Shown here in pieces: positions 12,496-55,757 of a stretch of DNA of 64,000 nucleotides (the first letter of the stretch is position 1; each line of letters begins with the position of its first letter). The position numbers and the translations under genes were made by a program. The notes beneath the pieces were generated by a model. The model saw only the letters and a program-made list of their open reading frames with translations, did no database searches and had not been told where the DNA came from. Source of the DNA: Ruditapes philippinarum (Eukaryota); NCBI RefSeq assembly GCF_026571515.1, contig NW_026852821.1, forward strand, positions 62,001-126,000. The letters run 5' to 3'.

Positions 12496-12904
12496 ATGGC
12501 AGAAAATTTGACATATATTGCGGAAGTTGAAAAGAATTCAGATATCCAATCTTTATTTTATGTTAATATGAGCAACGGTTCGGAGCTTTTGTCAAATGAA
12601 ACTCTTAATACACATGCTGTCGTGGAAATGAAATTCAAATCACCGCCTTTGAAACTAGAAGATATTATCACTTTACCCTTTTACACTTTGATATTCTTGT
12701 TGTCTATTGTTGGAAATTTACTGGTCATAATTACTCTGATTCAAAACAAGCGAATGCGAACCGTGACAAATGTGTTTCTTTTGAACCTGTCCATAAGTGA
12801 TTTGCTGTTGGCCGTATTCTGTATGCCATTTACCATCGTGCCAGTCATGTTGAAGAATTTTATATTTGGAGCAACGATTTGTATACTGATTCGGTACTTG
12901 CAAA
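12496..12904 (+). CDS. CCK/gastrin/sulfakinin-receptor-like GPCR, first coding exon copy A (N-terminus, TM1, TM2, ECL1, start of TM3)
   Basis: ORF contains TM1 'LIFLLSIVGNLLVIITL', ICL1 'QNKRMRTVTNVFLLNL', TM2 'SDLLLAVFCMPFT' and 'NFIFGATIC' (C3.25), motifs typical of CCK receptors. There is an in-frame stop just upstream of the ATG and N-glycosylation sequons in the N-terminus. Similarity ends at CAA A|GTAAGA (donor GT at 12905, phase 1). Confidence 0.9.
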
Positions 12905-15900
12905 GTAAGAGTTTAGATTTTATTCTTATTAATTCTGCTTTATATTCTGAATTGTTGGATACATTTAACAGCTGACTGAAATATGAATATAAAATGCAAA
13001 AGTATATGTCCAACTTTTATTGGTTTGTTATAAAGTATTAAAATTTACAATCTGCCTTCTTTACCTGACAGACTAGTTATTGAAAAAAATAATAAAAGAC
13101 ACCAAAATAAAAAAAACATGACATGGTTATATTAAAAATAATATATATTTTTCATATATAGGCAAAATGATGTCGTCACTAATTTGGTTTGTTAAATGAG
13201 GTATTATGATAATGAGGAGTCCGGATGAATGGCAAAAAATATTAAATTTGTCAGTATGAGGTACTTTCCAAATAGATTATAATAGCTGTATTTCGGTAGA
13301 TACTGTATATTTTGGTATATAATTTTTGATATATACGGAATAAAACATATTCTGGATAGTCAGATAAATTTCATAATTTCTTCGATATATTTTTCAAGTA
13401 AAATGAATTATACGTCAACTTTTATAGTGAAATATATAGGTCATAAGTTCAACGCGAAGAACATTAGAGTTTCCTGTTCTTAGAAACTGCTATCACATGA
13501 CATAACATTTATGTTTGATTGGCATGAGAAAAATATAAATTTCTGACGTTTGTCGCTTAAATGCTTTCTTTAAATCTTGGAGATAGAACATATTATTGTT
13601 TTAAGAATGTTCTAACAAATGAATGGAGATTGATTAAAGAATTATCGAGAAATTACGTCAATGGTGTCATTATTTATTTTGGCATGCAAATATAGAGTAA
13701 TATGAAACAAATATCTTATTATATGAAAACAAAAATAAAGAGCGTGTGTTTCATGAATCACGCGATGATATTTGTTTGACTTAGTTTGAATTGACCTTTT
13801 TGTGCTCGTTTGGTTATATTTATGCTTCAAAAATAAAGGATATGAAGAGTGTTAATACAATGCGCAAAATGTTAATGAATTCAGTTACTTCATAATTATC
13901 ATCATTATTATTCTTAATTAGGATATGGCTTTCAAGAAATAGAAATAATGTTGTCACATGTTTGAAAATGTATGTGAAGTTGCTACAAAATAAATTATTT
14001 AAATGATTGTTTTTAGATATTTTCCAGTAGCTAAATGGGATATGCTTAAATAATAAAGTTGTTCGGCCCTATTTAACAATATGTTTGAAAATGTTTTACA
14101 TGTGGATGAGTTTTTTATTTTATATCTTATGGAACAATTTAAAAAAAATCAAAACATATTTTATCTATTTGTCACTGCCATTTTAGTGCTTATTAATCTT
14201 AGCAGATTCCATCGACTACAAGTATAAACATATCAGAACTGTACAATACTTCAAATTTAAGGCACCCTAGCAAGCCACACTATACGAACAGTCAAAAAGA
14301 AAGAATTTTACTGCAATACGCCCCATTGCGTCACAAAATGTTACCAAATATAGGTTTTACGAAATCGGCAGAGAGAGACAAGAGCTGCTCCGGATTATAT
14401 ACGAAAGTGCGCTGCATTAGACAAGTTTTAACTATTAAGTTGGTTACGAAATCCGGCAAATTGATTTTACTGCAAGAATTTAATGACACCAAACATATCA
14501 CCAGCTGATAATTAATATGTGTGTGCTGCCTTAGCAATTTTGTTTCTAATATTATCAAATTTAATAAATCTAATATAACATTTTCGTGATGTTTCTATTC
14601 AAATGCGTTATGTTTTTTTCCTGTTTCCATAAAATTTCACAATATAATCAGCGATAATTATGACAGCAAAAGGTTTGTTTATTTGCATGCTTCTTTCAAC
14701 GGGAAATGCGCAAAATAGTATTTCTTATTTATGTTGTAAAACAAACATTTGAGACAACTTTTTATATCTATTTCTATTTTGTATTTTATTAACCTTGAAA
14801 ATTGTTATAAAATAAGCAGAGGATTCTTTTCATTTTAAAAGAAAGTTTGGAAGAACTTAGTATATTATATATTATATGATATTCTATTCTTCAACCCACG
14901 CGGGACAGCCACACATGAGCACATTCACTAGTCTAAGACAACTTTAGTGTGTCAGTAACTCGATTCTCTGTCACAGTTGTGTTGTCAGACCTTTCAGCAG
15001 CGTCCATTGCGATTACGTTGGGCTGTTGTCGGTAGTGTGAGTTATGGCATATATAAATAATTTCCGTTTTTGGACTGCCTTTCCAGTCACCAAATGAAAT
15101 TAAATGAAAATGCCAACACGCATCTTGTTTTCATTGACATATTTCACATTGTTGTCTATTAGGAAAAAAAGCTTATTAAGACTGAAGTATACAAAAATTC
15201 AAACACAAATTTTAAGTGTTAGTCTAAGATACAAACACGATGAAGCATTATAGCAAAATAACTGTAATACGAAAACGTGTTTCAAGCATTATATATCTAA
15301 ATAATTTCATGGTTATTTTCCATGATCTCCTGTAAAAGGACACTCCATGTATGCGCATAAGATTACATTGTGGTTAAAGCTTTATCTTCTTTGCACATTC
15401 TTTTTTAATATTTTTTTCGTCACCTATCAAAATGGTAAAGGCTAATAAATGCTCATTAACGCTTGCTTACAAGCAAACAAATTAATAACAACATTCATTA
15501 TTTGTGTTAACTATTATTATTGCATCATAATTTGATCATGACAAAGGCATTAATGTAATGCAGTAAAGAATTAATTTCATCTTAAAAATTAATTAAACTT
15601 AATGTCTGGCACAGTTGGATAGGCGCCTTTTTTAATGTAAGCCATTTAATGTATTAACTTATATGAAATTGTGAACGTTATTCTATATATTAGAACTTTC
15701 ATTGTACTTTAGTCTTCCTATATAATGCAAGTTAGGTGCACCTTAAAGTTTATGTGTACTTTCCGGTAGATCTTACACCAGGTTTATAAATTGGATTAAA
15801 TGATGATGCAAAAAATAAGGCTTTTAAATTTTGTTTTATAGTTGAAATTAGATACAAGCAGTGCATTTACATCCAGTTTTTATTTTATTTTTTCATTTTA

Positions 15901-18900
15901 TTGATTGAATTTAATAGATAATGTCTTAAAAAGTAGGTAAAATGGTAAAATATGTTTTCAAGATATTGCTCGGTAAAAATAGATACTACAATTATTGTTA
16001 AAATATGAGGCGAAATGACAAGTTTACAAACGAACGACGTTATATCGGGTAAGAATTTCACAAAAAAATCGATTTTTATTTTTCTACTGGTTATACATTG
16101 ATCTATTTGATAAAAATACATTCCATGTTTTAAACTTTTGAGCCCAAATAAAACTCCTTTAATTTTGAGCTTTTTTCTTGGGGGCTGAGGGGATTGGTGG
16201 GGGGGATTACGTCGCACCAACAGAGTGTTCCCCATGTCAGTTCGACGTAGTACACTTAAAATTAATTAACTGGAGTGCAGCCTCTTACAGCCTCTGAAAT
16301 GAAATAAAATTTCGCTCAATTAAATATTAAACTTGATATTGAAGTGAAATAAATATTTTTTCTTTTCTAAATTTAAAGTCAAAGTAACCCGGGTGATCAA
16401 AAATATATAATTGGTCACAACGTTAACTTTGTTGAATGAACAAAAGACATTCATAATTGGAAACAAAACAACCCTATTGTCTTCAAAAGCAAAGTCTTAA
16501 AAAAACATACACAAGTATGTGCTTCATTGGATGTCAAAATATAATATTTAAGTAAAATGAAATCTCTTTTTGTGCAAAGTCCCTAACAATTATGAAAAGG
16601 ATAATTTACTGTCATTGGCAGAAACCCTTGTTTTAAAATAATTCCTGCAGCATACGCTGACATTATTTTATGTTTTATAATTTACACACTGTTCCAATTT
16701 ACTAACCTCATGTCTTAAAGTATTTAAAAACGTAAAATAAACTTCATTTTGAACCATATTTGAAGTTTTTTGTAGCACAAACGGACTTGCATCATAGTTT
16801 ATATTTCATAACACCATATACTGTAAATTCATTAGTATTGGGTGGGGGTAATTATTGTGGCTTTTGTGTATACTTATAGGAATCTAGGAATTTCAGTATT
16901 TAATTGAGCGAAATTTTATTTCGTTTCAGAGGCTGTAAAATATTTTGTAATACATTACTTGCATTTTCCCTATTCCAAAAAAAAAACCAACAACAAAAAA
17001 AAAAGAACAACAAACATGTAATTAACACACTTGTTATACATGATTTGAATTTAAAAAAAATGTATGCGCTGAAAACAAAAAACATACACAAAAAACCAAC
17101 AACAAACACCATGCAATGCTAGTAATTTATGATTTATAGTATCTGAAAAGTTGAGCAAAATAACGATAAATCTATTTGAACGTTCCCTTTAGTTGTGCAC
17201 GCAAAAGTCTCCCAAAAAGTTGTTAAGTTCGCTCTGTTATTACGTGTACTCATATAAAGCTATTACCTAAACATGCATGATTGTAATTAATCATTCTTGA
17301 CAAATCTCTTTAGGAATTATCTGAATGCACAACTGAGCTGCCTACCATGCAATACTATACAAAATTGCTCTCAAATTTTAAAATTTATTCCTAAATAAAA
17401 AAGTTTTTTCTCTCAGAATTGAAAACCTCATGGCATATAAACCATGAAAACTAAATCATTGTATTGCAAATAGTTCTTGCAAGAACAGAAACATATCAAT
17501 CGTCTGAAACAAGTGGAGTTAAATTAGATATTTTTTGCGCAGGAAGTGACGTTTTAAGTTTTCTCTAATGATGTTCTTTTTTCGTATTTATTTTATAAAC
17601 CGACATATCTTCATTACGAAGAAAGAGTTAATGATACTTATAAAGAATCCCTGGAAGTTATTCTTTACAACTCACTGCAAACGCCTTTTTGCACTCATTA
17701 AAGAGAAATTTAGACTGTCACTATGGTAATCTGATATGTTTTATATGTTTATTGCCTAAACCTGGTGGCTAACTTATATCATTTATGCAGCATAGACGGC
17801 AACAAGACATAACACGGTAAAAAGTGTTGTTTTGTATAATTTAACATTAGTATATAGATATAGATTAACGTATTAGCGCAAAATTATAATTAGCATACTA
17901 AGGGATTGGTCAAAACACCAAAGCTTTATGTGGTATTTTCCTATAGCTATGAACATTCTTCAAACGAGACAGATGTTTTGTATCTTTGTACATGAAATCC
18001 AAAATTACAAATACAAAATTATAATGTAAATACATGTACGGTTGGAATAGAAGTTATATAAATATTATCAAGGGCCTTTTCCTAGATGTATTGTCATGGT
18101 TTTGACTTGAATGTTGCAAGGATGTGCATTAAAACGGGCTCAAAATCGTGCAAAACATGATATAAGTCTGAGTTTATTTCTTTATTATCATGTGTTCTTC
18201 ATTTTAAGTGCATCATTCGAATGATCTATGTAAAAATTAAAATATTTATATATTATGCATTTTTAGTACAGTGAAACTCCTTTAATCAAATCATTTGTCT
18301 TCATTAACTCTAAAAATTGTTTTCAAGTTATTTGTTTCCTTCTACATTTTTTATCTGGAATCATTTACATGTTCTAAATCAACATTATACAGAATGTTAT
18401 AACGTATTCTTTGAAAATATTGTATTTCACATTTCTTTCTGGCAATTTCTTGTGTTTGTAATTAAGTCGATTCACTTGCTGTTTACTAGGCTAGACCATT
18501 TTCTAAGTTCAAGAAAAACTTTGGCAACAAAGGTAAATAATGAGTGTGTGGTTTAACGACATTTTCTGATAAGAGAAAGAGTGTATCATTCGTTTCGGAT
18601 ACATTTCCTGTGCGAATGAAGTTCAGATGAATAGTGAAGGAAAAAAACATTATTGCTATATCAACACTTGTCAATAGTAAAAATGAGCTTTATAGAGGAA
18701 ATAGTAGGAGTATGTTTTGACGAAACAAGATTATAATTATTATAATTCATAAAAGTCTCTGCATCAAGGAAATTCTTAAACAACAAAAATTAAATCGCGG
18801 AATGTTTCCCAAAATCATAATTCTTTATCCTAAAAATATAACTGTAATTGTTAAAATTTGAATGAAATGAACGTATCAATGCTTTGTCATTAGATCTTTT

Positions 18901-21426
18901 AAATTTATTGGAAAGTAATTGATTTCAATTATAGCGAAAAATATTAGCCGCCAAGGAAAAAGGAACGTGTGGTTAATTTTGTTCAAAGTCAAAGTCAATT
19001 TGTCGAAGTTGATTTGTACTTCTTTTTTTATAGAAAAATTACGCACAAATATAATTTGTATTTCCACTTTTTATTGAAATATTAAGAGCAAACGAGTGTG
19101 TATGTAAAATAACTGTCTTTGGTTTACATAATATGATAGGATGTGATGCAATATTATAATAAGAAATGTTTGATTTGACAATATCAATATAGATTAATAT
19201 ACGCCAATGTCTTTTGTTAATAGAAATGACCATGGAAAAACAACGTTACAAATCGTTTAAGCAACCCAATCTTAAATCATTTTTCGATTTATAAAAAACA
19301 TCATTACATGATGTATAAATTACTAATTCGGACAGCATTCTTTCAATCAAAAATAGTTTTTCTTCGCATTTTTATAATTACCTAGGAACATATTATATGC
19401 TGTATACTTGTAAATAAAGTCTGCACTTTCCAAATGTGTGATTAGTGTTTGCTTGTGTGATAGAAGGAAATCGGACAGCTCTGAAAAATGTGTACAGAAG
19501 ACCCTTTTTTGGTATTCAATGCAAAACTAATTTTATGAATATTCAGGTGAATATTTAAACATATGGACATGTCTTATATGATATTTCATTAACTAGGCCC
19601 CTAGACTTGGATATTTTTCAGCCTATTACACAATAATTGTATTATACTCCTTTTAAAATTTAATAAAGTGTGCACTATTCGGTTATAACATTTTTGAAGT
19701 AATGGAAATCTTAAAAGGTTTCAATACTTTATTTTTATTTTGTGTTAATAAATAGAAACAAATAAATAAATTAAATAATTGCATGTTTCGTAATCGATTT
19801 TTTTCCTATGTTAGACACTGGTGCAATTTCAACAATATTGATTTTAAATGTATGCTAAAATTGTTCTTACTTTAAAAAGAAAGAAAAATAAGCATTACAA
19901 TTTTGTCAGATATATATGTGTACAATATGCATCACTGAAACCTAAACTTATACTTAATGGTGTTTGTTAAGTTACAAAAAATCAGTTATTGAAGAGAAAA
20001 TAATTCAAACATACAGTCATTTAAACCTTTACGTTAAACTATGACACTTAGTAAAAATTTATAGATTAAGTACAAAAGGTCTTTAATTTGAAGCAAACAC
20101 TATTTCAAAGACTGACTTTACATTCAAGCTAATTAATTTTCTGATAAAGTGATTTTGCAGGTGATCTTAAAAAACACAAGCAAGAAACTTGAAGCTTTGT
20201 GTTGTCTGAGTTGTTAGCAGACAGAAATTAATTTTAAGACAGGTATAGATAAGTATCAAAGATCAAAGAGTGGGAAAGTATAGCAGTAACTGTTATGTTT
20301 ATTGTGGATATTTTTGTTCACCCTAATATGCCAATTTCTGGGTGTTCTTCGAAACTTATCTCAATAAATTGAAAATGTCTAGCATAAGTAAAAAACATCA
20401 ATGTATAATCATTTAAAAGATACATTTTTGTTTCTGGTAAATAAATTAACAAAAACATGACTTTCCAAAAATACATTTTTGTGTTATAAAATAGCTTATT
20501 TTATACACAGGAATATTATAAGAGTTGAATAAAAAGTTTGTCATACGGCGTCAGTATAATATAGATCCACGAAATAAATAAATATTCAGTATTTGAATGA
20601 TTGTTTCTTTTAAACACTGATAATCATATCGCTGTTTTTCAATAAAACACAAGCAAACTCAAGTACTACTTAAAGTAAAATTGTAAAATTGGTCTTCAAC
20701 GAAATATCTGCAACACAGTGAATAATTACTATAATCATATTTACATGTATTATTAGACATAACAAATTATACATGTAATTATATAAGTTGTTGGCTTGTG
20801 TGCGATACATGATTTCATATATCTATATAGAAGATAATAAAATGTTCTAGAACACAATATTTATATTTTAGAATATATTGGCATTTTTTTCAATTCAAGC
20901 AACATTTCACAAGAACATCTAAATGATACTATACTATTGTCTTGATCTATATGTAAAAAATCTTTTGGAAATTTTCCCATTGTAGACCTATCCACTTAAT
21001 TATATACTTAATATTAATATTGTAATAAAATGCCAATGCAATGAAATGAGCCGTGTTATAATAACTTATGTAAATTTAATTACAATCCAGTTTCTACAGG
21101 AAACATGTTCTAAGACAAAAAGTTTTATTTTTTTTAAGTTCAAAATCCCATGTTAGCAAATGAAAAAATCCTTTGAGGGCATGATTGAGGTAAGTAAAAT
21201 ATGTTCATTTCAATTCAGTGTGACGTCATACATCAAAGAGAGGTATTAACATTGTCAACAAAGTAGTTTGAAGCAATGTATTTTTATAGCATTTTTGAAT
21301 GATATAATTATGTTGGTACTGTGAATGTTAACATAAGATGTGAAGTATATGATCATTTTCTGCGCTAGTTTTAATTTGACCTACCGATCCTTTGTAAATA
21401 ATGTCACTATTTCCAAAAACGTCTTT

Positions 21427-21750
21427 TAAAGGCATATTATGCCTCAAAATACAATATTTGTTTAATTATTTAGAAATATCAAACATTTGTTTAGTAATAT
21501 TTGCATATGGTTTAAGAGCATGTTGGATGTTAAACAACTGAAGAAGTACCGCTGAGCATGCTTCATAAAGGATACAAAATGTAAAAAGTTTATTTTGACT
21601 TCAATTCATTATAATTATAACAAGTGCCAACTGACCAAAAAAAGAAAACGATAGCCTAGGGTTTTATAGATATTATGGAAACTGTAAGATACCAAGAAGT
21701 ATTTTAAGAAATAAAAAATATTGCATTAATGAGGCATTATGGACCATTAA
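21427..21750. mobile_element. Probable TTAA-flanked MITE (copies at ~30595-30910 and ~49149-49490)
   Basis: Imperfect TIRs ttaaaggcatattatgcctca / tgaggcattatggaccattaa. Internal similarity to 30595-30910 and 49149-49490. Confidence 0.5.
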
Positions 21751-22074
21751 AGGACTCCACCGAGGACTTTTGATAGCATGACTCGAAATATATTGAGATG
21801 TGTTTATTATTTGATGGAGGAACCAATTACTTAATTGCAAAAAATATCATATCATCATTGTTTCACTTTTTCAAGAATAATCATTTTTTGTATGAAACAA
21901 AAAAATCGAAAGATTGAAAAGGCTTTAAACCCTGGCAAGTATTGCACTAAACAAATCATTTAAGGTTCATTTCTTTATGTTTTATAACAATTTGCATATT
22001 TTTCTGTATGTAAGAGATAGAAAAATATGTCTTAGGCTTTTGGACCTCGATGCAGTTCCCTTGAAACTTATTCT

Positions 22075-22225
22075 ACGAAACTGTTTTTTACGATTTTATA
22101 TTTAAGTGCAGTAGGGTTTGAATCTCTAGATTATATGTCTGGTACTTATCGTACCGATTTCACATGAAGAGTCAGGCTTATGCCCCTCTCCTGGAGAGCT
22201 CGATCCTCCGATTTCTGGATCTAAA
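22075..22225 (-). mobile_element. Old SINE fragment (3.2-kb family) within duplication unit 1
   Basis: Reverse complement 'cctgactcttcatgtgaaatcggtac' resembles the 3.2-kb SINE body. Shared with unit 2, so it predates the duplication. Confidence 0.5.
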
Positions 22226-24660: not shown

Positions 24661-24749
24661 CTTAAAATAAGTTTTGTTGTATTTAAACATAAACTATTTG
24701 GTCAGAAAAAGAAATATTCAGCGATTGACTATATTTATTATCATTTGAA

Positions 24750-25128
24750 ATGGAGTTTAACAAAACGCATGGATATTCTTCTTCGGAAAATGGAAGCGTT
24801 AACTTTAACTTAGGGTTTAATAATAAATTTAATGACAATGGTACAGACCTTCCGGACTTTGAATCACCGAGATTGAAAACGGAAGATATAATTACTTTAC
24901 CACTTTATTCTTTGATATTTGTTCTATCCCTTGCGGGCAATGTATTAGTTATTATGACATTGGTTCAAAATAAACGTATGCGAACCATAACAAATATGTT
25001 TCTCTTGAACTTGTCTGTCAGTGATCTTCTGTTGGCGGTATTCTGTATGCCGTTTACCATCGTGCCAATTATGTTGAAGAATTTTATCTTTGGAGCAATG
25101 ATGTGCGTATTGATTAGATACATGCAAA
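24750..25128 (+). CDS. CCK-receptor-like GPCR, first coding exon copy B
   Basis: Same motifs (GNVLVIMTLVQNKRMRTITNMFLLNLSVSDLLLAVFCMPFT...FIFGAMMC). In-frame TGA at 24726 upstream of the ATG. Consensus donor A|GTAAGT at 25129, phase 1. Confidence 0.9.
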
Positions 25129-34448: not shown

Positions 34449-34827
34449 ATGGAGTTTAACAAAACGCATGGATATTCTTCTTCTGAAAATGGAAGCATTA
34501 ACTTTAACTTTTGGTTTAATTATACCTTTCATGACAATGGTACAGACCTTCCGGAATTCGTATCACCGAGATTGAAAATGGAAGATATGATTACTTTACC
34601 ACTTTATTCTTTGATATTTGTTCTATCCCTTGCGGGCAATTTATTAGTTATTATGACATTGGTTCAAAATAAACGTATGCGAACCATAACAAATATGTTT
34701 CTCTTGAACTTGTCTATCAGTGATCTGCTTTTGGCGGTATTCTGTATGCCGTTCACCATCGTGCCAATTATGTTGAAGAATTTTATTTTTGGAGCAACGA
34801 TGTGCGTTTTGATTAGATACATGCAAA
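34449..34827 (+). CDS. CCK-receptor-like GPCR, first coding exon copy C
   Basis: Paralog of copy B (21 nt differences in 379 by my manual alignment), intact frame, donor A|GTAAGT at 34828, phase 1. Confidence 0.9.
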
Positions 34828-37800
34828 GTAAGTATCAATAAGATAATTAGATATACATTAGAAAAATGTAGTCAGTTATTGCGTTTATAACATTTAAAGA
34901 CAAAATAGTAACGAAGACAGGGGATGAAACCTCAAATACTAATGTTAAGCATAGTGTCGTTTCCTTTCAAATCGAACACCTTGCTATATGCTGAAAATAA
35001 TGATAATAATTGCAACATACGTTTAAAGAGTGTCTGGGTTTTTTCTTGTCTAATAATTTAAACGTTAAGTTTGTTAATTATCGCTTTGGAAATCTTTCAT
35101 TATATGAAATAAATAATCCTAAATGATATGGCCGTCATGGTTTAATAATTGTGATTCGTTTTAACTCACTTTTAAGAAGTCAAAAACTTATGTAATATGA
35201 ATTAAATTACTTGAATTACTCACATTTTAAGTTAATTTCCACGTTTGGTTTTACTTCAAATGTATTGTAGTGCAAGTTAAATCAAGTTTTTTTTTCTTTT
35301 ATTTTTTTTTCACATTATTTATCTAATAATTTGAATTATTAAATTATCCCTCTTGATATTTTAAGCACCCATTTAAAGCAGTTGGAAAATAAGGAAATGA
35401 CCATTCGACGCGTCTGATAACATTAGATAATAATAGCAAACTATGTGCCAACTAAAGACAAATGTATCTAAATAACAAAATTATAATAACAAAATGAAAA
35501 ACGACACCACTTAATCAAGTAACATAAACAAATATTTTATACTGTTTCATTCAAGTACCGCATGAACATGCCTGTAAATTAATTATTACTATATTTACTC
35601 AAGAATAATTTCGACAAACATGTATTAATTTCACGTTAACAACTGATGAAAAATAATAATTAATTTAAAAGTACAATGTCAATTCAAAAAAATTATAATA
35701 GTTATGCTAGCAAAACTATGTACTGGGGTAAAAACAAAATGTACTTTCTTTTACTATTAAATAGCTACAAATCTTGATTGTGATGTTTCGTACGTTAAAT
35801 TTCTGGTCAAGAACATCATGTTATTCAGAAAGACAGGTTAATGTCAGTGTTATCAAGCTTGTCCCAAATCACCATTTTTTCAAAAATAATTATTATTAAG
35901 CTTCATACTGTAATACTTTATACTACTTAATTTATATTGACTTACTGATAAGTTGGTTATTCAATAATTGCAAATTAGTATTGAGTGATCATTCTTTACT
36001 ATATAGTGCATTCTAGTATTTGGCCATCAATAAAAATGCATATTTATCTATTCATTGTTTCAGTGCGTCTTTTTCCGACATGCTTTATGAGAAACGTTGT
36101 AGGAATTAAAATATTAAACCTTTGTATTAGATTAACTGAGAATGTATAGTTGGCTTTAGATCAATTACAATTAAGTTGACAATTATTACAAAATATAATA
36201 CAGTAACATTAGTGTTTAAGACAATGCATTAATAAAGATTCTAGAAATAAGTGTTCTTTTCGTTTTCAAGGTTCTGCGAGCGACTTTAGCAATGTAATAA
36301 AACAGTTTAATTAAATCTCAGAATTTATTTCTGTTCTGAACTGGTTATTTATGATACCAAATTAGTATTCCTTATTTATTACCATCTTGCAGTGTTTATA
36401 ATCCAAGTTAGAAACATAAGAAGAAAATGGAGAAAGGCAAAGTAATTAAATGATTCTAAAAATTGAAGTAAACAATGTTTATTCTTCAAGCCTAAATATA
36501 TATCCTTGATTTGATCGATTAAAGGACAAGTGCTGATAATTTTCATGATATTTATGATCCACCCATGAAATGCATCTGTCTGGCACGCTACCGTTAGTAT
36601 GGCATTTGCATTGTTGCCCGTCTTGCTTTGAGATCGACGAACGACGATGCCACGTGACAGCGTGACAGTCATGTGACCCGATATAATCTTGAGCTATATG
36701 ATTATTGCACCTTACGTATTAAAGTTTTAGAAATATTTCAAGGTGATAATGTATTATCCAAAATGAATGTTGATTTTAACTTTTAGTCTGGGTAGTTTGT
36801 GTATACTCGTAAATAAAGCGGGTAGGGTACAACGTAACCCTTGAATAAGTTTGCCTTTTTATTACACTTTACTCTGATATTTACAGGAGCGAGATTTTGT
36901 TGCACAAAATTAAATGGTTTTCTATGATTTTAAGACAATTTACCAAGAAAATATTGCCACAGATTATAATTCCGTGATATGTTTTGAACGTATCATAATG
37001 TTTATATTAAGAAAACAAAAGAAATATCTTTGGAAAAAACACAATGTTAATGCTTGTAGCATACTTCTGCTTAACACTTTGAATTAAACAAAAAATGATT
37101 TGATCCGACAACTCGTTTTTTCTTCTTTCAAATCCATAAGTTTACATGCTATTCCTTCAAGAAGTTAAGTGCCGGTTTTGTTTATGGTTTCGTACATATT
37201 TTCTTTCATGATTTGCGGTTTTCGTATCAACGGATAAATGTAAGCGAGGCAAAGTTAACATTTGCTTGTTTGTTGGTGTTGTTGTTTTTTCGCAACATCA
37301 ACGCGCAATGGACTGGAAAGTGCACACTTAGCTTAACCGGTTTGTTTTAATGTTTTTTACTTTCATGTAGAGTTTACTGACGTCACACCAATTAAAGATG
37401 ATTTTACTATAATTAAAACTAATAGCACATCGTAAGCTGAGCATAAAGAACAGATTAATACACGTTGTGCACCATTTATAATATTCGAATTTGATGAGCA
37501 AAAATGTTGAGAAATTAGATTAGCGCAAATTACATTAAAATTTGTGGTTATTAATTTGTTTATTTTATGTGTGCCATGGTTTGATTTGATTAAAATGAGA
37601 ACATTGATTTTTGACGCAAACCAGACCCTCTGAATACTGCACTTTGTTGCTTTTACACATCTGTCAGCATTTTATCTCATGGAACTACTTTGGAATGGAA
37701 AATATTCCAATATCGTCAAGTGCATTTCAATTAATTTTTTTTTTAAAAATGTCAAAAATGTCTGGACCAATACCGATACAAGAAAGGCATTTTGTAATTT

Positions 37801-42275: not shown

Positions 42276-42293
42276 TGTGTGTGTGTGTGTGTG
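42213..42293. repeat. (GT)n/(GCGT)n compound microsatellite
   Basis: Directly visible. Confidence 0.95.
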
Positions 42294-45820: not shown

Positions 45821-45859
45821 TATATATTAATATATTTTATAATAAGATATTATTTTGTT

Positions 45860-45946
45860 CTTATTTTATTTTATTTATTTATTTATTATTATTATTATAA
45901 TTATGATTATTATTATTACAATTTTAGTATTTTCATTATTATCATA

Positions 45947-45988
<42 letters not shown>

Positions 45989-45990
45989 TA
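45860..45990. repeat. (ATT)n microsatellite / AT low-complexity
   Basis: Directly visible. Confidence 0.95.
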
Positions 45991-48900
45991 GCTTTATAAA
46001 AATATTTAAAAAGACGGTTAAATATGTTAAAAAATGCTGGGTATAAAACGGGCAAAATGTGATAAAAAGGCACAATCAAATCGTATTACTTTATGTTCAA
46101 AATAATTACATAATACGAGATGGACAATATCTCGAACAATGTCTCTTGAAATAATTATAGAGAAACAACCCTAATATCGGTTACAATTGCGCAAAATTAA
46201 TTATAGACTTTTTTTCTATGTCATACTTTGATTAACTATTATTAATATAAATAGGCTGCGGGTTGCTTAAAAGCGTTTGTAGAGATACAAATAAGTTCTT
46301 GACTCTTTTTTTTATAATAGCAATTGAACTTAAAAATTCATGATCTTATCCCTGAAAATGAATTTATTCATATTTACATTTAGAATATATGCAACAGAAG
46401 TAATTCAACTTTTAAGTAAATATTATGAAAGACATAAGCTTCCGGTTATTTCAAATACGAAAAAGATGTTTTACCAGGTCAACACGGTAGCATATCATCA
46501 TTGTCAGTTGTGGTATTTAAAGCGTTCAACATTAGCCTTTAAGGCGTTCCAAATAAGAATGTGTCCCTTATGGCGGAGGGGTTGTGACGTAATAATTGCA
46601 GCTGATGTTTATCCCTGCGTGATCGTTATAGGCGATTTAATTGGTTCGGATGACTGGAGCTTATGTACGTAAGCTCCAGGTGTAGAGTTTGTGTTGTTGA
46701 CACCTGGTGTTACTTAAAGTTTGTAATTCGCCAAAATCATCTTCCCTGTTTCGGCGCCATATGACATAAAATGTGTTAATGCGACGAAAAACCAGACAAA
46801 ACAAACGGAAAACAAAAAATTGAAAAGCTGAAACTAAACATATCTGCAGCATTTTAAGAATTCCGTTCCTTGTTAGCACGATATTAGCACTGTTGCCACT
46901 TAATCTTTTTCATGCACTTAGTCAATTAAAATTTCCAATTCCTCTAAATTTCTGTCAAATGTTCTCGTTATTTCGTGCGAACACTTAATTTGTGCCGGAG
47001 GTATCGCCATTGTTAATGTGATACATAACGAGAAGTTGACATGGTTAATCATTTTGGAATTCAATATGATTACAAAAACAAAATTTAAACATTTATTATT
47101 TATGCATAACAAAAGTTGCATGATTTAAATGCATTAAACTGCACTAAAAGAACAGAATTTGTTAGCATTTATGAAATAAATTATTTGTTAGCATTTATTA
47201 ATTTGCTTACATTTATAAAACAAGCACAAACAAAGATAACAGCTTATGGTATCAGTTTGAAAAAACAATTGGAATAAACTCAGAACTATTTTATATTCCA
47301 ATAAGTTGTTTGATGCTTAATTATGAAAAAGAAATATAGTTTACTTACATAACAATAGCCCTAGCAATGTTTTCGATAGACATAACAAATATAGACTGAT
47401 ACCATTTATTTTTGTTTTATTATTAGAATTCTTAGCTATAAAATAAAAAGCTTTAATTAAGGCTTGTAGTTTATGTCTTTTTCAGAGTAATCTTGACAAT
47501 TCGCCACAATATAAAACTAATTTAATAGCTATTTAAGATGTTCTTATTCAGAATAAATTGAAATATAAGGAGAAAGCGGACAACTGTATTATAATGTTGA
47601 GCATTGTATTGAAATAGTGTTTATTGTTTAATCATGCTTTAAGCTAGTGATTGTCTTTCAGTTCATGATAATACAGGTACCTGCAATAAAAGTGTCTATT
47701 GTTAGTTATTATTGCTTGATTAAATCTGAAAACCTTTAGCTGAAGGCATTATTAATTAATGTATACATCGTTCATTTTGAACAGAAAAAAAACAACAAAA
47801 TACAATATAGCAGATCTTGTTTCTATACGATTTTAAGGTAATCTAGTCAACGTAGTTAAAGAAAATAAATAACAACATGGATAGAGTTTTTCCTATTATC
47901 TCGTTTATATATAAATGATAAATTATCGTTTATTTTACACTAGCAAATGCAGCGTTTTTATTATTTATATGGGTTATGCTAAATGCCTTTTGGATCTTCT
48001 TACAAAAAAACCGCTTAAATTTGCAGGCAATGTGTAATTATCGCGTTGTGATATAATTAATAACCGTTACATTATAAAACAGGTCTAGTTTGTTTATCAG
48101 AGTGGGTCATGCGCCTGTATTACTGTTTAATGACATTTTGTAATAATTATGTTTAATATGTTTAAATCATAGGCAAATTAATCATAAACCGCCCCATAGC
48201 TAATTTTAGAAACTCGATAGATCTTGTTTAAAAATGTCGATATGGTAAGCTGAACTAAAAATTTAGGATACCATCACCTTAAAATAGATAAAACGGTAAG
48301 TATTTGAGCCCCCCCCCTCTCCTTTTATGAGTTTGATCGTCTGTAACAGTCCTCGCATTCCTAAATTAGTTAGATCGCTTCGCACATCTTATAGTAGCGT
48401 ACTATATAATTCGTATGTTGAATGTCAACATACTTTCTGTAGTATGTGTATTTTGTATTTATTCGACTGTTTAAAGACACTTTAAGTTTTTATTATTATT
48501 TCCTTTTACATGAATTTTGCAATGATTAAAGATTGGCTGAAGTGCATGTAAGGTTGTTATCATATGACGAAATTTGTGCTTAAAATTATCATAAATCTTG
48601 CATAAAAGCTGCGCCCGTAGTTAAACATTTTCTTGTTAAATAGTAATTGAATCAACACTCAATTCAAATTGGGAAATGCATTACCCTGCATTGCAATTGG
48701 TCCATGTGAGAAAAGGTGCACAATTGTAGTTCCCGTATTTACATGCAATCAAATAAATCGTTGAATTCGACAATAATTGGCAGTTTCTGAAGCTATTGCC
48801 TCCCATAATTGCATGTTATCACTAATATCCGCTAGAACAGATTTATTTCGGAGATATTGTCAATGTTAGCGAGAATTCTCTACGGATCAGCAGCATAATA

Positions 48901-50865
48901 TATAACATTGCGAATTAAATCTATCTTCCGATGTAACACTTTGAAAAAGAATACGGCGGTGAACACATGTTCGTTTTCAATTTGCTAAAAAGACAAACGA
49001 AAACAAAAAACAATGTTCGACATATAGCACCATCAGAGAGTATATGAACCAAATAATCTTACTTTACATTTGTAAATTGTTCATATAAATTTCATATTTT
49101 ATCAAAGCAGTCGCTTGACGTATGTCAATATGGAAATTACAAAATTGTAAGGCACATTATGCCTCAGACATCCCTGTTTTTAAATTCTTTTATAAAAATG
49201 TCATTTCTTCATAATGGTTTTAAAGTATATTTGATAGCTGTAAAAAGTAGCATGGAATGTGTAGTAATGTGTCGTAAAAAGTAGTAAAATGTAAAAGAAA
49301 GTAGTATTTTGACTTCCATATAAAATACCAATTCACTTAAATTATGAATTTGCCAACACAACGAAAGAAGCAGGATAGTTTATCAATATGGCAAATGTGC
49401 ATTTTGGATAACTGTGACAAGATTCAATTTTTAAAGGTTTCTTTTTGTTTTACTTTGTTTTTATTTAAAGACATCATTTCTAAGGCATTAATAATATAAT
49501 TGTTCTTTTACAAAGTCTAAACATGTAGAAATCATTCGACCTTTGTCAATGCTAAATTACAATATTAAACAAAATCTTAACATGTTGATGTCTCTAGAAG
49601 TTTATCAATATTTAAATTACATAATTTAACAAAATCTAAACAAGTCATGTATAAAAGTCACAAGACTTTATGTCCATATGAAAATTAAGCAAACTCTAAA
49701 CACAATTAGAGACAACCTTAACATGGAGCAGTTACTCTACTCATGATTTATTTGGGTTTTATAATTTGAAATTTTACTGCAAAAATAAATTTTGAAATCA
49801 TCTAAGGATTATTCATTTTGAATCGCACCAAACAATAAACAGTCTGAAACTTTTGAAAATTACAATGAATTCGAACCAAGAATAATCATTTTATGACTAC
49901 GTCTTAAAATTGTAGCGTCTTATCAAATTTAACATGGAATTTTAGATTTGTTTCTGTTAATTCTTGCTCAGATTATTCGAAAAGGTATCCTTATCACAAG
50001 TATCAAAACAGATTCTCAAGCAGTAATTAAATGCTTCTTTGTTCTGAATTTTTATTCTGCTTTAATATTTAATATTAGAAGCGCTTTAATGTTTGATACC
50101 TTTTCACTCGGAAGTTATATTTCAATGGATATCAAAACATCATTAATTAGCAATAAAGCATTACGGTATTGAATACTCCGATGCTTTTTCTTTAATAATC
50201 ACACGTAATTAACAGATAAAAAAACGTATGCATTTAAAAGCATACATGTAGTAAAATATTATTTTTAATCTTGTTAAATTCATTAAATAAATCACTCATT
50301 AAATTACTTTGAAGTTTTAAATGATTGAATTTACGTTGCTTATCGCATTTACTTCTTATGTACAGAACATTTAGTTAAAATTCAAACTTAACTTTTATTG
50401 CCTGTTGAAAACAAATTATTACATTTAATTAAGTAACGTTTTATCACTTTCCACTTTACTGAATTTATTGCACTTTTAATAACTTTAACAATTTTAATGA
50501 AATCACGTGATTATGCATTTACTTTTCGTGTACAGAAAAAAATAAGTTAACATTCAAACAGAACACAGATCTGTTCGATTAAGCAAGGTCTGTTTTCCGC
50601 GATAAACTTTAAATAGTTAAAATTATTTTTGTATTGTCAGAACTGATTAAGAAACATGTCAGTTTTGGATTTCGTATTGTTTATAAGTGTGTCCCTTTGT
50701 TGGGATTATAACAGAAATATAACCTACTAGTAGAAAGAATCTTTTAAAGATTTTAAAAACGTAAATTGGCGGACGCCTTGCAAACGACCACCTTAGGACA
50801 AGACTGTACACCTCATTGTGTTGTTAAATAAAACTTCTGTTGACGATAAAAGTCCTCACCAGATC

Positions 50866-51068
50866 AACACTTTACCTGCTTGAACCGATATTCGTCAGCC
50901 ATTGTCATCAGTATAGAGCCAAGCCAGCCTTCACTTCCCTGTAGTCTGACCAGGCTCGATACTGTTGGTAGCTTAATTGTTATATTTTGATATTAAAAAC
51001 CCTTAAATTGAATGAACTGTTCTAAATTTAAAGCAGGGGTAATATGTTAAACAAATTCTGGAGGTTAA
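50866..51068. mobile_element. Diverged MITE-like fragment
   Basis: Inverted ends ttacctgct / agcaggggtaa. Internal 'ccagcct...gtagtctgaccagg' resembles the core of the 55.8/56.6-kb MITEs. Confidence 0.4.
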
Positions 51069-51138
51069 GAGTTAAGTTTAAATCAACGGAAGACATTATA
51101 AATTTACCCTTACATTCAGTAAAATTTATAGAAATTTA

Positions 51139-54100
51139 TTTTTTTTTTTTATTTTTTTTTTTTTTTATTGATCAAATATAAACATTGTATTTACAGCATG
51201 GGTATATAAACATATAACTATAAATGAATTCAAAGTAAAAAACAGAACATATCATAAAAGAAAAATAATTCATTTTACATACTACACTCATTCATCTGCA
51301 CTCTCTCACTGCAGTCTGCGCTTTTGATATTGTTATTGATCATATCTATTCATCTTTTCAGTCATTTACTCATCTCTAAAGCCATTTTAAGCGGGGTAAA
51401 ATATAATAGTTTGATGTGTAGTTTTTGTATTGGTCAATACAGCCTAAAAGTTTAAGTCTGCATATATGTAGAGAATAATAATAATAATAGTAATAATAAT
51501 TATAATAAAAGTAATAATAATTATAAGAAGAAGAAAACAAAAATATTGTGTTAATCTGCATAAAGGAAAATTAGATAAGAATTCCACGCAGAATTAAAGG
51601 TTTCAACATTGTTATTTATCATTGCAGTCTCTTTTTCAATGTTGTAACAATATGTTATATAAAGTAAATTAAAATTAGATTTTTAGTTTTTGATAAAGGA
51701 CTTTCATCTGTTAAGCCAAAAATCATTTCGTCTGCAGTTAATGACGGAAAACTATTCGTTTTTGTTTTGAAATAGATATCAATTATGTCCTTTACAAAAC
51801 TACATTGCCAAAACAAATGTTCGATAGTTTCGTTTTCATTTTAACAAAAGGTACAAAGAGGATTATCATTATATTTAATTTTATGTAAATAATAGTTAGT
51901 GCCAATTTTTCTATGAATAATCCTAATTTGAAACCACTGTATCCTAGAATCTTTTGTTATTTTAAATGGCATTTCGTAAATTTCTTTCCATTTACTTTCC
52001 TCAAAATGAAGATCAAGCTTTTTCATCCAGGTTGCTTTACTTGTTGGTTGTGTGTTATAAGTATTCAATAAATTGTAAGTCTGTTTTGATCCTTTATTGT
52101 TAATAATTATGTTTTTTTAGATAAGGAGGCAATTTTGGTCCACAAGTTTTTTTTACGTCATTCATACTAAAATTAAATTTTGTCATCATTTCATTTATCA
52201 TTTTTTTAATTCCATGAAAGATTAAAAAGTTTGCATTAAGCCTTAATATATTATTAAAATCTTCTAATGAGAGAAAAGCACCGTAAGAATCAAACATTCT
52301 CCGATATAATATACACCGGTTTAAACCATGAATTAAGAAATATACTTTTATTGCCAATTAGTAATTTATCGTTATAAAAAAATGGTAGTTCTGCGAAAGA
52401 TTCGTTATTTATAGGATACTTATCTATATATGTAGAAAAACATTAAAAGTGTCCTTCCAAAAAACGTTTGAAATGCTTTTTGCAATTTTATCTATGTAAT
52501 GTTTTCCACAGTGAAATAATTTTTGCATATCAAATTCATTTATAATAATGTTTTTCCAACAGGCATCGCTAATCATTCTTTTGAACCAGCTTATCTTTAA
52601 AGCCATTATAAAAGCATTTAAGTTTAACATTTTTAAACCTCCCTCTGAATAGTCCTTAACCATAACAGTATTTTTTATTTTAACATTTCCTTGCCATATA
52701 AAATCATAAAACATATTGTTAAGTTTATTTATCATGTTCTGAGGTGGTGATGGTAGGGCTATAAAAAGATGGTTTAAAATTGAAATTAAAAGCGTTTTGA
52801 TAACTGCGATTTTTCCTATTATATAAAATTATGTTTGTTCCATGATAATTTCCATCGTGTTTTTATACTATTTGATGAGTATTTATTTTTTCCTATCCAA
52901 ATTACTTTTGTTTTATCAAAGTTTACATTTAGTCCAGATATATGAGCAAATTTCGATAACACATCAAGTGCCTGATTTAAGGAATTGCTTGACCCGTCCA
53001 ATATTAAAGTTGTATCATCCGCAAATTGAGATAATTTATGTTCTAAATTATTTATCTTTATACCTTTTATTTCTTTACAGTTTCTTATCTTAAGAGAGAG
53101 AATTTCAGCACATAAAATAAAGATGTAACAAGAAAGCGGGTCTCCTTGTCTGCAGCCTCTACCTATTGTTACAAAATTTGACAGAAATCCACATTGACTT
53201 ACAGCAGACTGTGCGTCTTTATAAAAAATATTAAACCATCGTTTAATAGAAATTCCAAAATTAAAATAAGACAATGTTTTTTGAACAATGACCAGGACAA
53301 AGAATCAAAAGCTTTTTTTCAAAATCAATTAAAAGAAGAAGACCAGGAGATATCTTTCTCTTCAGTATAATGCATAATGTCGTATATAAGTCTTGAATTT
53401 TCTCCCAATATATCTACCCTTAATAAATCCGGTTTGATCTTTGCTAATTAATTTGTTTAAAGTTTTTTTAATTCTATTTGCAATGACTCCAGAAGCAATT
53501 TTATAAACTGTATTTAAAAAGAGTTATGGGTCTCCAATTTTTTTAAAAATTCTTTTGGTTTATTGTCTTTAGGAATACATGTAATTATTCCCTGTGTTTG
53601 AGTTATGGAAAGTTTGCCTGATTCATATGCGTTATTAATAGCTCTAACGACAAAAAACTCCTATCTTTTTCCAAAAAACTTTGTAAAAATCTGCGCTGAA
53701 ACCAGAAGATCCTGGACTTTTATTATTTTTCATGTTATGTAAAAACTAAGTTGCTTCATGATAGTTTATTTGACCCTTCTAAAGCATTTGACTCTGTTGG
53801 ACATTTTTTTTAAACAGGTGCTTCTATGTATGAAATAAAATTTTCAAAAAGAATCGTCATTTTCATTGTGTATTTTTTTGCCATAAATAGGTTTTGATAA
53901 TATTTTTTTCTAATTCTTCGAGCAATTGCTGTTTTGTCTTTAACAATTGTTCCGTCCATCCTTTTAATTTTATAAATAGTTTTAGAAGTTTGATTTTTTT
54001 TCTCTAAGCTGCAAAAGTACTGTGAAGGTTTTTCACCTTCAAGAATCCCACTTAACTCTAGAACGAATAAGATAGCCCTGTAATTGCGAATCATTTTAAG

Positions 54101-55201
54101 TTATGAAGCTCTGTTTTGAAGGTCCCGAAGGTGCGTTCATTTTATATTCAGTTAAATCGGCTTTCTAAAATCATTTATTTCTTTAATGATATTTTCTTTG
54201 TTTAAGTTAGTTTTCTTCTTTACATAACTACTATATGATATAGATTTCCCTCGCAGTTCCATTAAAAGAGTTTCTAAAAAACAATTGATCATTTATTGTA
54301 AATTGAATTTCATTATCTGGAATTTCAGTAATGTTGTTAAAATTATAAACTGGTAAATGCATATTGTATTTTTATTTCGTCAATTATTTCGTTTATAGTA
54401 TTTAAATAGTTAATGTCCTTTAATAATGAATTGTTGTGTTTCCACAAGCCTTTGCCATGTTTAAAGTCGTCTAACTTTAAGTTTAATATTACAATGGAAT
54501 GGTCCCTGATTGGTAGCTTTGTAGTTATGGAAACATTTCTACAAAGTGGAACAAAGTTGAAGTTATTAAGAAGAAATCTAGTCTTGCTTGCTGAAGAGGC
54601 GTGCGTTTTTTACGCCATGTATATCGTCTTAAAGTTGGATTAAAACTCTCTAAACGGGTCAACCATATCTCTTTGACCAATATTAATCAAAACCGTATCT
54701 CTAGCTTTACTGTTATTAATATTTTTATAGTTAAAGTAGTCTTTTAATGGGTCTAAAACTAAATTGTAATCACCACATAATATATATGAATCATTCTCTA
54801 TCCTGTTTAATTAAACTGAATATTTCATTAAAAAGTTCGGGTTTATCAGTATTTGGGCCATATAAATTTACTAGAGTAATCTTCTGCCCTTCAATGGTTT
54901 TAAGTCTAATACTATAAAATTTCCAATTGGGTCAATAAATTTGTTATGGATTTTGTAGTCAATGTTATTATTAAAAAGAATCGCTAACCCTCTGGAGTTA
55001 CATGTTCCAGGGCTTAAAATACACTCATTATTCATTCACAGTATATCTTTTGTACATATCTAACGTAAAATGTGTGTCTTGAAGACAATAAAATGTTACA
55101 ACTTTTTTTTTTTAAAAAAAATGAAAACGGATGATCTTTTTTTTAGACCCATTCAGGCCTCTACAGTTCAGAGATAAGACATTTATATTACTTTCAACCA
55201 T
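51139..55201 (-). mobile_element. Non-LTR retrotransposon (L1/Tx1-like) ORF2, frameshifted: AP endonuclease, reverse transcriptase and C-terminal Cys region, with 3' UTR and poly(A)
   Basis: Minus strand starts MVESNINVLSLNCRGL at 55201 (APE motif). RT motifs GCRQGDPLS and QFADDTT (52819-53274) and NWRPITL are present, as is C-terminal 'WFQIRIIHR...CTFC'. AATAAA directly precedes the poly(A) (poly-T at 51139-51166 on +). No ORF1 seen, and the 5' boundary is uncertain. Confidence 0.92.
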
Positions 55202-55497
55202 ATTGAAGTAATGCAGAAAAAAATAAAAGAGATAAGTTAAAATATAACCAAAAATCATCATTAACATTATGGCAGATTGCGTCTCACATACAATACAAAA
55301 AACGAATACACAACAAAAAATACTTGAATTAATATTTCAAAAAGGTTTGACAATAAACCTCTTTTAACCAAGACCATTTTACTACAAATAAAAAATTGAA
55401 GCATTTATATTTCTTACACTTTTGATATATTGGCGTCAATACTTAACATGATTAGAAACTTTGCAGTCTATTCATATTTATATATAGTCATTTTGAA

Positions 55498-55757
55498 ATT
55501 AGAAAGTAACTGCTAGAAATGATTTTTAAACTTGTATTTTAATGACAGAAGAAATGATATCTTAATAGCCAAAAGTAAAAAAAGGAATTTATTAGTCATA
55601 ACAATATTAGGCCAGAATAATCGAATGCGGACATTTACAGACTTGAATAGCCCCGTTAGTAATCTGTTTTGGGCTATATTCTGTATGACGTTTACCATTG
55701 TATCAATTATGATGAAGAATTCTATATTAGGGAAACAATGTGTGTATTGATAAGATA
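55498..55757 (+). pseudogene. Decayed fourth copy (D) of the CCK-receptor-like first exon
   Basis: Reads NLLVITILGQNNRMRTFTDLNSPVSNLFWAIFCMTFTIVSIMMKNSILG, then a frameshift to TMCVLIRY. Upstream context 'tcattttgaaatt' matches B/C 'tcatttgaaatg' with ATG lost. Most of TM1 is deleted. A MITE is inserted just before the donor, and no GTAAG follows it. Confidence 0.8.

What the first reader, a model, noticed from the sequence alone, without database searches (positions are those of the whole stretch)
12496..55757. Array of interchangeable 'variable' first exons for a CCK/sulfakinin-type GPCR (protocadherin/UGT1A-like architecture)
Seen: three intact same-strand exons and one dead copy. Each intact exon has its own ATG (in-frame upstream stop checked for A and B), encodes N-terminus+TM1+TM2+ECL1+C3.25, and ends at the identical phase-1 donor 'RY(L/M)Q A|GTAAG'. 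I could not find an intact TM3-TM7 exon (expected VSVxVSxxTLVAISLERY, CWxP, NPxxY) in the 10-20 kb spacers or downstream. Known: clustered protocadherins and UGT1A use tandem variable first exons with separate promoters, spliced to common exons. In peptide GPCRs the N-terminus, TM2 and ECL1 contribute to ligand recognition. Inference: one locus could make several receptors with different ligand-binding front thirds and expression domains but a shared TM3-TM7 signalling module located beyond position 64000. I do not know of this arrangement being described for an invertebrate neuropeptide receptor.
Basis: partly seen in the sequence, partly recalled or inferred. Interest (0 to 1): 0.92.

Follow-up and report, generated by a model that had tools for sequence, protein, structure and literature searches.

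The report
Clam CCK receptor, swappable first exons
In the Manila clam, one cholecystokinin-type receptor gene has a row of nine alternative first coding exons (seven intact) upstream of a single shared set of downstream exons; this layout is known from protocadherin and UGT1A genes, but I found no description of it for a neuropeptide receptor.

Summary
The window is Ruditapes philippinarum contig C1308:62001-126000. Exons A, B and C are intact and the fourth copy is dead. The whole array has nine same-strand copies between 35 and 148 kb of the contig: seven intact and two dead.

It lies 8 kb beyond the last copy, about 30 kb past the window end, as two exons with matching phase-1 splice sites.

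RefSeq already models one gene with isoforms X1-X4. Each uses a different first exon (A, C, V9, V1) joined to the same two exons. Exon B, V2 and V8 are in no model.

Between classes the TM1-ECL1 core has dN/dS of 0.04-0.12 with dS above 1, so the copies are old and kept as coding sequence. Almost all variation lies in the glycosylated N-terminal tail. TM2 and ECL1 are nearly invariant, so "different ligand-binding thirds" is overstated.

The hard clam Mercenaria has two isoforms of the same kind.

Separate promoters for each exon are therefore inferred, not shown. I found no paper describing this arrangement.

An unchecked scan note reports two tandem first exons at another GPCR in this genome.

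The parts
12496..12904 (+). It encodes the start codon, a 58-residue tail with 4 N-glycosylation sequons, TM1, ICL1, TM2, ECL1 and Cys3.25. It ends CAA A|GTAAG (phase 1).
   Evidence: It is identical to residues 1-136 of RefSeq XP_060566544.1 (isoform X1).
24750..25128 (+). It is intact, with 126 codons plus the phase-1 base and the same donor. No RefSeq isoform uses it.
   Evidence: dN/dS against C is 0.26 in the core. No protein carrying B was found in the databases searched.
34449..34827 (+). It is intact.
   Evidence: It is identical to residues 1-126 of XP_060566561.1 (isoform X3).
55523..55745 (+). Dead copy V6. It is a degenerate TM1-TM2 remnant with no N-terminus and no GT donor.
   Evidence: (57% identity over query residues 57-120). 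Its flanks are homologous to those of the second dead copy, V7, at C1308:129155-129403.

Best explanation
This is one CCK/sulfakinin-type receptor gene of the Manila clam, built like a clustered-protocadherin or UGT1A gene.

Layout. Nine paralogous first coding exons lie in tandem on the + strand of contig C1308:
- V1 35095-35377
- V2 56648-57056
- V3 = A 74496-74904
- V4 = B 86750-87128
- V5 = C 96449-96827
- V6 dead, about 117.6 kb
- V7 dead, about 129.3 kb
- V8 142503-142905
- V9 147750-148152

They are followed by one constant exon 2 (156473-156838, TM3-TM5) and one constant exon 3 (158295-158866, ICL3, TM6, TM7 and tail).

Mechanism. Each intact variable exon carries its own ATG and a phase-1 donor. 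A transcript that starts at one of them splices that donor to the single phase-1 acceptor of exon 2. The result is receptors of 438-448 residues that share TM3-TM7 and differ mainly in the glycosylated N-terminal tail, with a few TM1 residues also differing.

Shown here: the layout, the matching splice phases, the single copy of the constant part, long-term purifying selection on the variable exons, and four database gene models that use four different first exons.

Inferred: that each exon has its own promoter, that choice of exon mainly sets where and when the receptor is made, that the tail modulates rather than redefines ligand recognition, and that B, V2 and V8 are also used.
For: Nine same-strand copies were found on C1308. 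Their ATGs, upstream in-frame stops and GTAAG donors were read directly.

There is a single TM3 exon and a single TM6-TM7 exon, both with phase-1 acceptors. Genome-wide, the next-best copies of these two exons are only 42-55% identical and belong to ordinary one-to-one paralogs on C4147 and C8758.

The organism and the RefSeq isoforms X1-X4 were identified. All four map at 100% to V3, V9, V5 and V1, plus the same two constant exons. Their junction residues (Q-I-I and I-E-A) are the ones the predicted splice sites give.

Core dN/dS is 0.04-0.12 with dS above 1 between classes.

Whole units of 10-18 kb were duplicated together with their upstream flanks.

In Mercenaria mercenaria, isoforms X1 and X2 differ only in the first-exon part. 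Fragments from other assemblies match the classes. These include V8-like fragments that keep the same Asn at 2.50 and the same two-cysteine tail motif.

The best solved relatives are human CCK1R (E 1e-82) and CCK2R (1e-70); the next family scores 1e-44.
Against: I saw no RNA reads.

B, V2 and V8 appear in no model.

The X4 model starts at an internal Met in ICL1 and would lack TM1. V1 may therefore be a decaying or aberrantly used exon.

No shared promoter-like motif was found upstream of the four exon classes.

An upstream shared non-coding exon cannot be excluded.

V2, V3 and the copy on contig C1218 are 95-97% alike, so one of them could be a haplotig.
Confidence: 0.85

Rival explanations
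1. There is one promoter and mutually exclusive splicing. A shared non-coding leader exon upstream of the array is spliced to one of the variable exons, as with Dscam-type tandem alternative exons. On this reading they are first coding exons but not first exons.
For: No direct evidence. It is not excluded because I had no transcript 5' ends. No conserved promoter element was found upstream of the classes. The X4 model begins inside V1, which could reflect an internal acceptor.
Against: The sequence just upstream of each ATG is A/purine-rich and has no polypyrimidine-AG acceptor. An in-frame stop lies 2-15 codons upstream of each ATG. The duplicated units carry several kb of upstream flank, as expected if the regulatory DNA was copied with the exon.
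Confidence: 0.2
2. Only the annotated exons (A, C, V9 and perhaps V1) are used. B, V2 and V8 are unused relics that still look intact.
For: No RefSeq isoform and no database protein carries B, V2 or V8 joined to the constant exons. V2 is a recent copy of A (core dS 0.05) and could be too young to have decayed.
Against: B and V8 have intact ATGs, frames and GTAAG donors in 30% GC DNA, where a 130-codon frame rarely stays open. V8 differs from every other class at dS about 1 with dN/dS about 0.1. V8-like fragments from another assembly keep its special features. B and C differ at dS 0.11 with dN/dS 0.26 in the core.
Confidence: 0.15
3. The array is an assembly artefact, made of uncollapsed haplotypes or a collapsed gene family.
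For: V2, V3 and the C1218 copy are 95-97% identical over 2-6 kb. That is within reach of allelic divergence in a very heterozygous bivalve.
Against: Between classes only the 280-bp core aligns, at 77-81%, with dS above 1. The flanks of B and C are 78-90% identical. Identity along the V2/V3 unit runs unevenly from 78% to 95%, unlike haplotypes. Mercenaria also has two first exons for one constant part. The genome-wide search found no other constant exon set.
Confidence: 0.03
4. Each first exon belongs to its own complete receptor gene, and small TM3-TM7 exons were missed.
For: None was found.
Against: A six-frame motif scan of 266 kb of the contig found one TM3 exon and one TM6 exon. Whole-genome protein searches with both constant exons found one close copy each. 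No other ORF of 95 aa or more in the window has a Pfam match except a reverse-transcriptase remnant.
Confidence: 0.02

Closest known systems
Clustered protocadherins (Pcdh alpha/gamma) and UGT1A: variable first exons spliced to constant exons (from my own knowledge)
   Same: A tandem same-strand array of paralogous 5' exons. Each has its own start codon and donor. One downstream constant exon set is shared. Dead copies sit inside the array. Whole units were duplicated with their upstream flanks.
   Different: Here the variable exon encodes only the first third of a 7TM receptor (tail, TM1, TM2, ECL1), and its membrane part is nearly invariant. No conserved promoter element like the Pcdh CSE was found. 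Promoter choice and cell-specific use are untested.
Insect gustatory receptor loci Gr28b, Gr39a and Gr23a: several long alternative 5' exons joined to shared 3' exons (from my own knowledge)
   Same: A seven-transmembrane receptor gene in an invertebrate makes several receptors from alternative 5' exons and a shared 3' part.
   Different: Those are insect chemoreceptor ion channels, not rhodopsin-family GPCRs. Their variable exon encodes most of the protein and the ligand-binding diversity. Here the shared part is two thirds of the receptor.
Oyster Cragi-CCKR1/2 (PMC6219549) and human CCK1R/CCK2R
   Same: Same receptor family. The best solved relatives are CCK1R and CCK2R. ERY, CWxP and NPxxY are present, as is the ECL2 Cys-Arg that aligns with the human one. 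The oyster paper marks an arginine as important for the sulphated tyrosine of CCK and reports an intron at a position conserved in CCKR/SKR genes. I did not confirm that either is the same position as here.
   Different: The oyster paper's text contains no 'exon', 'splic' or 'isoform'. In the other molluscs, the nemertean and the brachiopod I checked, annotated isoforms differ elsewhere or were not compared. Only the venerid clams show alternative first exons.
Mu-opioid receptor OPRM1, alternative exon 1 / exon 11 promoters (from my own knowledge)
   Same: A class A peptide GPCR with alternative first exons, driven by separate promoters, that change the N-terminus/TM1 region.
   Different: The OPRM1 first exons are not a tandem array of paralogous copies, and the exon-11 forms lose TM1. 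Here seven homologous exons each supply a full tail-TM1-TM2 module.

Membership tests
CCK/sulfakinin-type receptor (class A GPCR) | Rhodopsin-family 7TM domain with E/DRY, CWxP and NPxxY | tested here: met
   Pfam 7tm_1 matches the first exons. MERY, CWSP and NPITY are present in the constant exons.
CCK/sulfakinin-type receptor (class A GPCR) | Closest relatives are CCK/SK receptors, clearly separated from other peptide receptors | tested here: met
   In the PDB search, human CCK1R scores 281 bits and CCK2R 242 bits; the next family (QRFP receptor) scores 156 bits. Homologues across molluscs are named cholecystokinin receptor.
CCK/sulfakinin-type receptor (class A GPCR) | ECL2 Cys-Arg (the arginine that binds the sulphated tyrosine) | tested here: met
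   Cys-Arg aligns with the human CCK1R Cys-Arg in the alignment. Its role is taken from PMC6219549 and from my own knowledge. It lies in constant exon 2.
CCK/sulfakinin-type receptor (class A GPCR) | Activated by CCK/SK-type peptides | not testable with these tools
   This needs a cell-based receptor assay with clam CCK-type peptides.
Variable-first-exon / constant-exon gene (Pcdh, UGT1A type) | Tandem same-strand array of paralogous 5' exons, each with its own ATG and 5' splice site | tested here: met
   Nine copies, seven of them intact with ATG, upstream stop and GTAAG donor.
Variable-first-exon / constant-exon gene (Pcdh, UGT1A type) | A single downstream set of constant exons with a compatible splice phase | tested here: met
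   One exon 2 and one exon 3 in the genome, with phase-1 acceptors.
Variable-first-exon / constant-exon gene (Pcdh, UGT1A type) | mRNAs join each variable exon directly to the first constant exon | tested here: inconclusive
   Four RefSeq protein models do so for V1, V3, V5 and V9. There is no model for V2, V4 or V8. No reads could be laid.
Variable-first-exon / constant-exon gene (Pcdh, UGT1A type) | A separate promoter in front of each variable exon | not testable with these tools
   Indirect evidence only: no acceptor-like tract before the ATGs and upstream flanks duplicated with the exons. No shared upstream motif was found.
Mutually exclusive tandem internal exons (Dscam type) | A shared upstream exon, and a 3' splice site on every alternative exon | tested here: inconclusive
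   No polypyrimidine-AG acceptor lies just upstream of the ATGs. Transcript 5' ends were not available.

The most novel reading that the evidence does not exclude
Venerid clams diversify one CCK-type receptor by promoter-driven choice among at least seven variable first exons of four ancient classes. One conserved class (V8) replaces the near-universal Asp2.50 with Asn and carries a two-cysteine tail motif. One locus would then give receptors that differ in tissue of expression and also in signalling or allosteric behaviour. That would be a protocadherin-style diversification of a neuropeptide GPCR. An unchecked scan note of two tandem first exons at another GPCR in this genome hints that it may recur.
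Probability: 0.35. Interest if true: 0.8.

Novelty: new member of a known kind. Interest (0 to 1): 0.6.

Why it matters
Animals usually diversify neuropeptide receptors by duplicating whole genes. A tandem array of alternative tail-TM1-TM2 exons in front of one TM3-TM7 module is a different route. It would let a single CCK-type receptor be placed under several regulatory regimes and given different extracellular tails while G-protein coupling stays the same.

It also gives a natural experiment on what the N-terminal tail and Asp2.50 contribute to a peptide GPCR, because isoforms from one locus differ only there.

There is a practical point as well. Gene counts and expression studies of "the" CCK receptor in clams will be wrong if reads are assigned without regard to the first exon, and three intact exons are missing from the current annotation.

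Tried and rejected

The whole-genome searches do cover them.

Spliced models. Searches were done exon by exon by reference, or with full-length proteins that the tools returned.

Promoter motif. I looked for a shared promoter element in the 800 bp upstream of four exon classes. Only A-rich words turned up, within the range seen in random controls.

Transcript-derived proteins carrying exon B. None was found. The hits are genomic single-exon frames that read into the intron.

Multi-stretch hits. P0001 and P0004 looked like chained first exons, but they are unrelated GPCR-like predictions with repeated segments. I rejected them.

Literature. Six searches found no description of this arrangement. 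The exon duplications in PMC6585902 concern peptide precursors, not receptors.

Positive selection on the tails. dN/dS is 2.3 for V2/V3 and 1.1 for B/C, but with only 9-10 differences this cannot be told apart from relaxed constraint.
Full report
**What is in the window.** They are open frames from an ATG at window 12496, 24750 and 34449 on the + strand. Each matches Pfam 7tm_1 profile positions 1-64, that is TM1 to the start of TM3, at E about 1e-15. Each has an in-frame stop 2-8 codons before its ATG and ends CAA A|GTAAG, a phase-1 donor at 12904, 25128 and 34827. The fourth copy, at window 55523-55745, is degenerate, lacks the N-terminus and has no donor.

The window is 30% GC. Only four ORFs in it reach 130 aa. 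Three are these exons and the fourth is a reverse-transcriptase remnant. Ten of the other twelve ORFs of 95 aa or more were scanned and none has a Pfam match.

**Where it is and how large it is.** The window is C1308:62001-126000 of a 1.4-Gb genome. The contig is 494,379 bp long. A whole-genome protein search with exon B found nine copies on C1308, all on the + strand. Reading each one gives:

| Copy | C1308 coordinates | State |
|---|---|---|
| V1 | 35095-35377 | intact frame, tail shortened to 16 residues |
| V2 | 56648-57056 | intact |
| V3 = A | 74496-74904 | intact |
| V4 = B | 86750-87128 | intact |
| V5 = C | 96449-96827 | intact |
| V6 | about 117.6 kb | dead |
| V7 | 129155-129403 | dead: frame break, one TAA, GTCAGT donor |
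| V8 | 142503-142905 | intact |
| V9 | 147750-148152 | intact |

**The constant part.** A motif scan of 266 kb of the contig found one TM3 exon and one TM6 exon. Reading them gives two exons:
- Exon 2 is at 156473-156838. Its acceptor is tttcag|TT and its donor is G|gtatgc.
- Exon 3 is at 158295-158866. Its acceptor is tttcag|AG, and it runs to the stop codon.

Both junctions are phase 1, so every variable donor fits the exon 2 acceptor. Whole-genome searches with each constant exon found a single close copy. The next-best matches, at 42-55% identity, are ordinary paralogs on C4147 and C8758, each with its own single first exon. So there are nine first exons and one TM3-TM7 set, which begins about 30 kb beyond the window end.

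**Organism and existing annotation.** A full-length relative pulled out XP_060566561.1, [quoted passage not shown], on a contig of exactly 494,379 bp. Its 90% cluster also holds isoforms X1, X2 and X4. Mapped back by tblastn at 100% identity:
- X1 uses V3 (A).
- X3 uses V5 (C).
- X2 uses V9.
- X4 starts at an internal Met of V1.

All four share exons 2 and 3, and their junction residues are those the splice sites predict. To my knowledge the NCBI pipeline adds alternative variants only when transcript alignments support them, but I could not inspect that evidence. B, V2 and V8 are in no model. I did not build a spliced model of my own; searches were made exon by exon or with proteins that the tools returned.

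**Are the copies real, old and in use?** Only the 280-bp core aligns between classes, at 77-81%. In the 90-codon core, dS exceeds 1 and dN/dS is 0.04-0.12 between classes. For B against C, dS is 0.11 and dN/dS is 0.26. That is long-term purifying selection on coding sequence.

The duplications involved whole units of 10-18 kb with their flanks. Identity along a unit is uneven, 73-95%, which does not fit uncollapsed haplotypes. The exception is the trio of V2, V3 and a copy on contig C1218. These are 95-97% alike, and C1218 may be a haplotig.

**What varies.** The alignment shows four classes:
- V1, V2 and V3
- V4 and V5
- V8
- V9

Between classes the roughly 45-residue extracellular tails are unalignable. 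Each tail still keeps 2-4 N-glycosylation sequons, except in V1. TM1 differs at a few positions. ICL1, TM2 and ECL1 are nearly invariant. Tail dN/dS is at or above 1, but on very few differences. The Cys-Arg that aligns with the human CCK1R ECL2 Cys-Arg is in constant exon 2. The oyster paper marks an arginine as important for the sulphated tyrosine of CCK.

The isoforms therefore most likely share their core ligand pocket. They would differ in tail-dependent properties and, by inference, in regulation. V8 alone has Asn in place of Asp2.50, plus a two-cysteine motif in its tail.

**Other species.**
- In Mercenaria mercenaria, also a venerid, isoforms X1 and X2 differ only in the first-exon part. 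The constant part is 82% identical to that of Ruditapes.
- Annotated isoforms of Mya, a chiton (Liolophura), Pomacea and the nemertean Lineus differ elsewhere. The Lingula (brachiopod) isoforms were listed but not compared.
- In a tree of first-exon sequences, all Ruditapes copies, both Mercenaria forms and several unnamed fragments form one clade with 97/95 support.
- Individual fragments match individual classes by their tails: 57% identity to V9 and 39-44% to V4/V5.
- The V8-like fragments keep Asn2.50 and the cysteine motif.
- A V8-like and a V9-like fragment are each recorded on a contig of 6,647 bp, possibly the same contig. This recalls the 5-kb spacing of V8 and V9 here.

The classes thus seem older than these species splits. 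The species of the fragments is unknown.

**Family.** The best solved relatives are human CCK1R (E 1e-82) and CCK2R (1e-70). The next family scores 1e-44.

**Promoters.** The sequence just upstream of each ATG is A-rich, with no acceptor-like tract. Upstream flanks were duplicated along with the exons. No motif is shared between classes beyond what random controls give. Separate promoters are the most likely reading but are not shown.

**What could not be done.**

**Literature.** Six searches found no description of this arrangement. The oyster CCK receptor paper reports a conserved intron, and its text contains no 'exon', 'splic' or 'isoform'.

**Verdict.** It is a new member of a known kind of gene organisation. 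It is already implicit in RefSeq isoforms but, as far as I could find, has not been described.

Noticed in passing
window 52819-53274 (-): A 151-aa ORF matches reverse transcriptase (RVT_1, E 1e-13). It is a retroelement remnant about 2 kb upstream of the dead exon copy.
   Followed up: partly
C1308:142503-142905 (V8; outside the window, would be window +80503): Variable exon V8 has Asn instead of the near-universal Asp2.50, and a Cys-x5-Cys motif in its tail. Two fragments from another assembly (P0306, P0307) share both features, so they are conserved rather than decay.
   Followed up: partly
C1308:35095-35377 (V1) and RefSeq isoform X4: V1 has lost the long tail: a stop lies at 35059 and the first ATG gives a 16-residue tail. 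The RefSeq X4 protein starts even later, at a Met in ICL1, and would lack TM1. I did not resolve why the model starts there.
   Followed up: partly
contig C1218:11799-12092 (locus L005): This is a tenth intact copy. It is 96.9% identical to the V3/A unit over 3.3 kb and 96.3% identical to V2 over 2 kb. It is either a haplotig of one of them or a further array member on an unplaced contig.
   Followed up: partly
contigs C4147:95882-101875 (-) and C8758:22937-32136 (-): Two conventional paralogs each have one first exon, one exon 2 and one exon 3. Their first exons are nearly identical to each other. The exon 3 match on C8758 contains two stops, so it may be a pseudogene or a poor haplotig.
   Followed up: no
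contig C7773, about 117-258 kb (+): At least seven same-strand GPCR first-exon-like frames of 136-182 aa lie 7-60 kb apart. This could be a tandem gene cluster or another first-exon array. An unchecked scan note (s1-810732) reports two tandem first exons for another GPCR in this genome.
   Followed up: no
window 11988-12138 and 7784-7951: Two short tandem repeats (76 bp x2 and 83 bp x2). The first lies 360-500 bp upstream of the ATG of exon A, in its putative promoter region.
   Followed up: no
C1308:148734-150017 and 150244-151491: A 1.3-kb local tandem duplication (89% identity) lies in the last intron, between V9 and constant exon 2.
   Followed up: no
protein P0043: A 298-aa predicted protein from an unknown source chains three similar tail-TM1-TM2 segments of a related receptor. 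It looks like a gene prediction that ran through tandem first exons in another animal.
   Followed up: no
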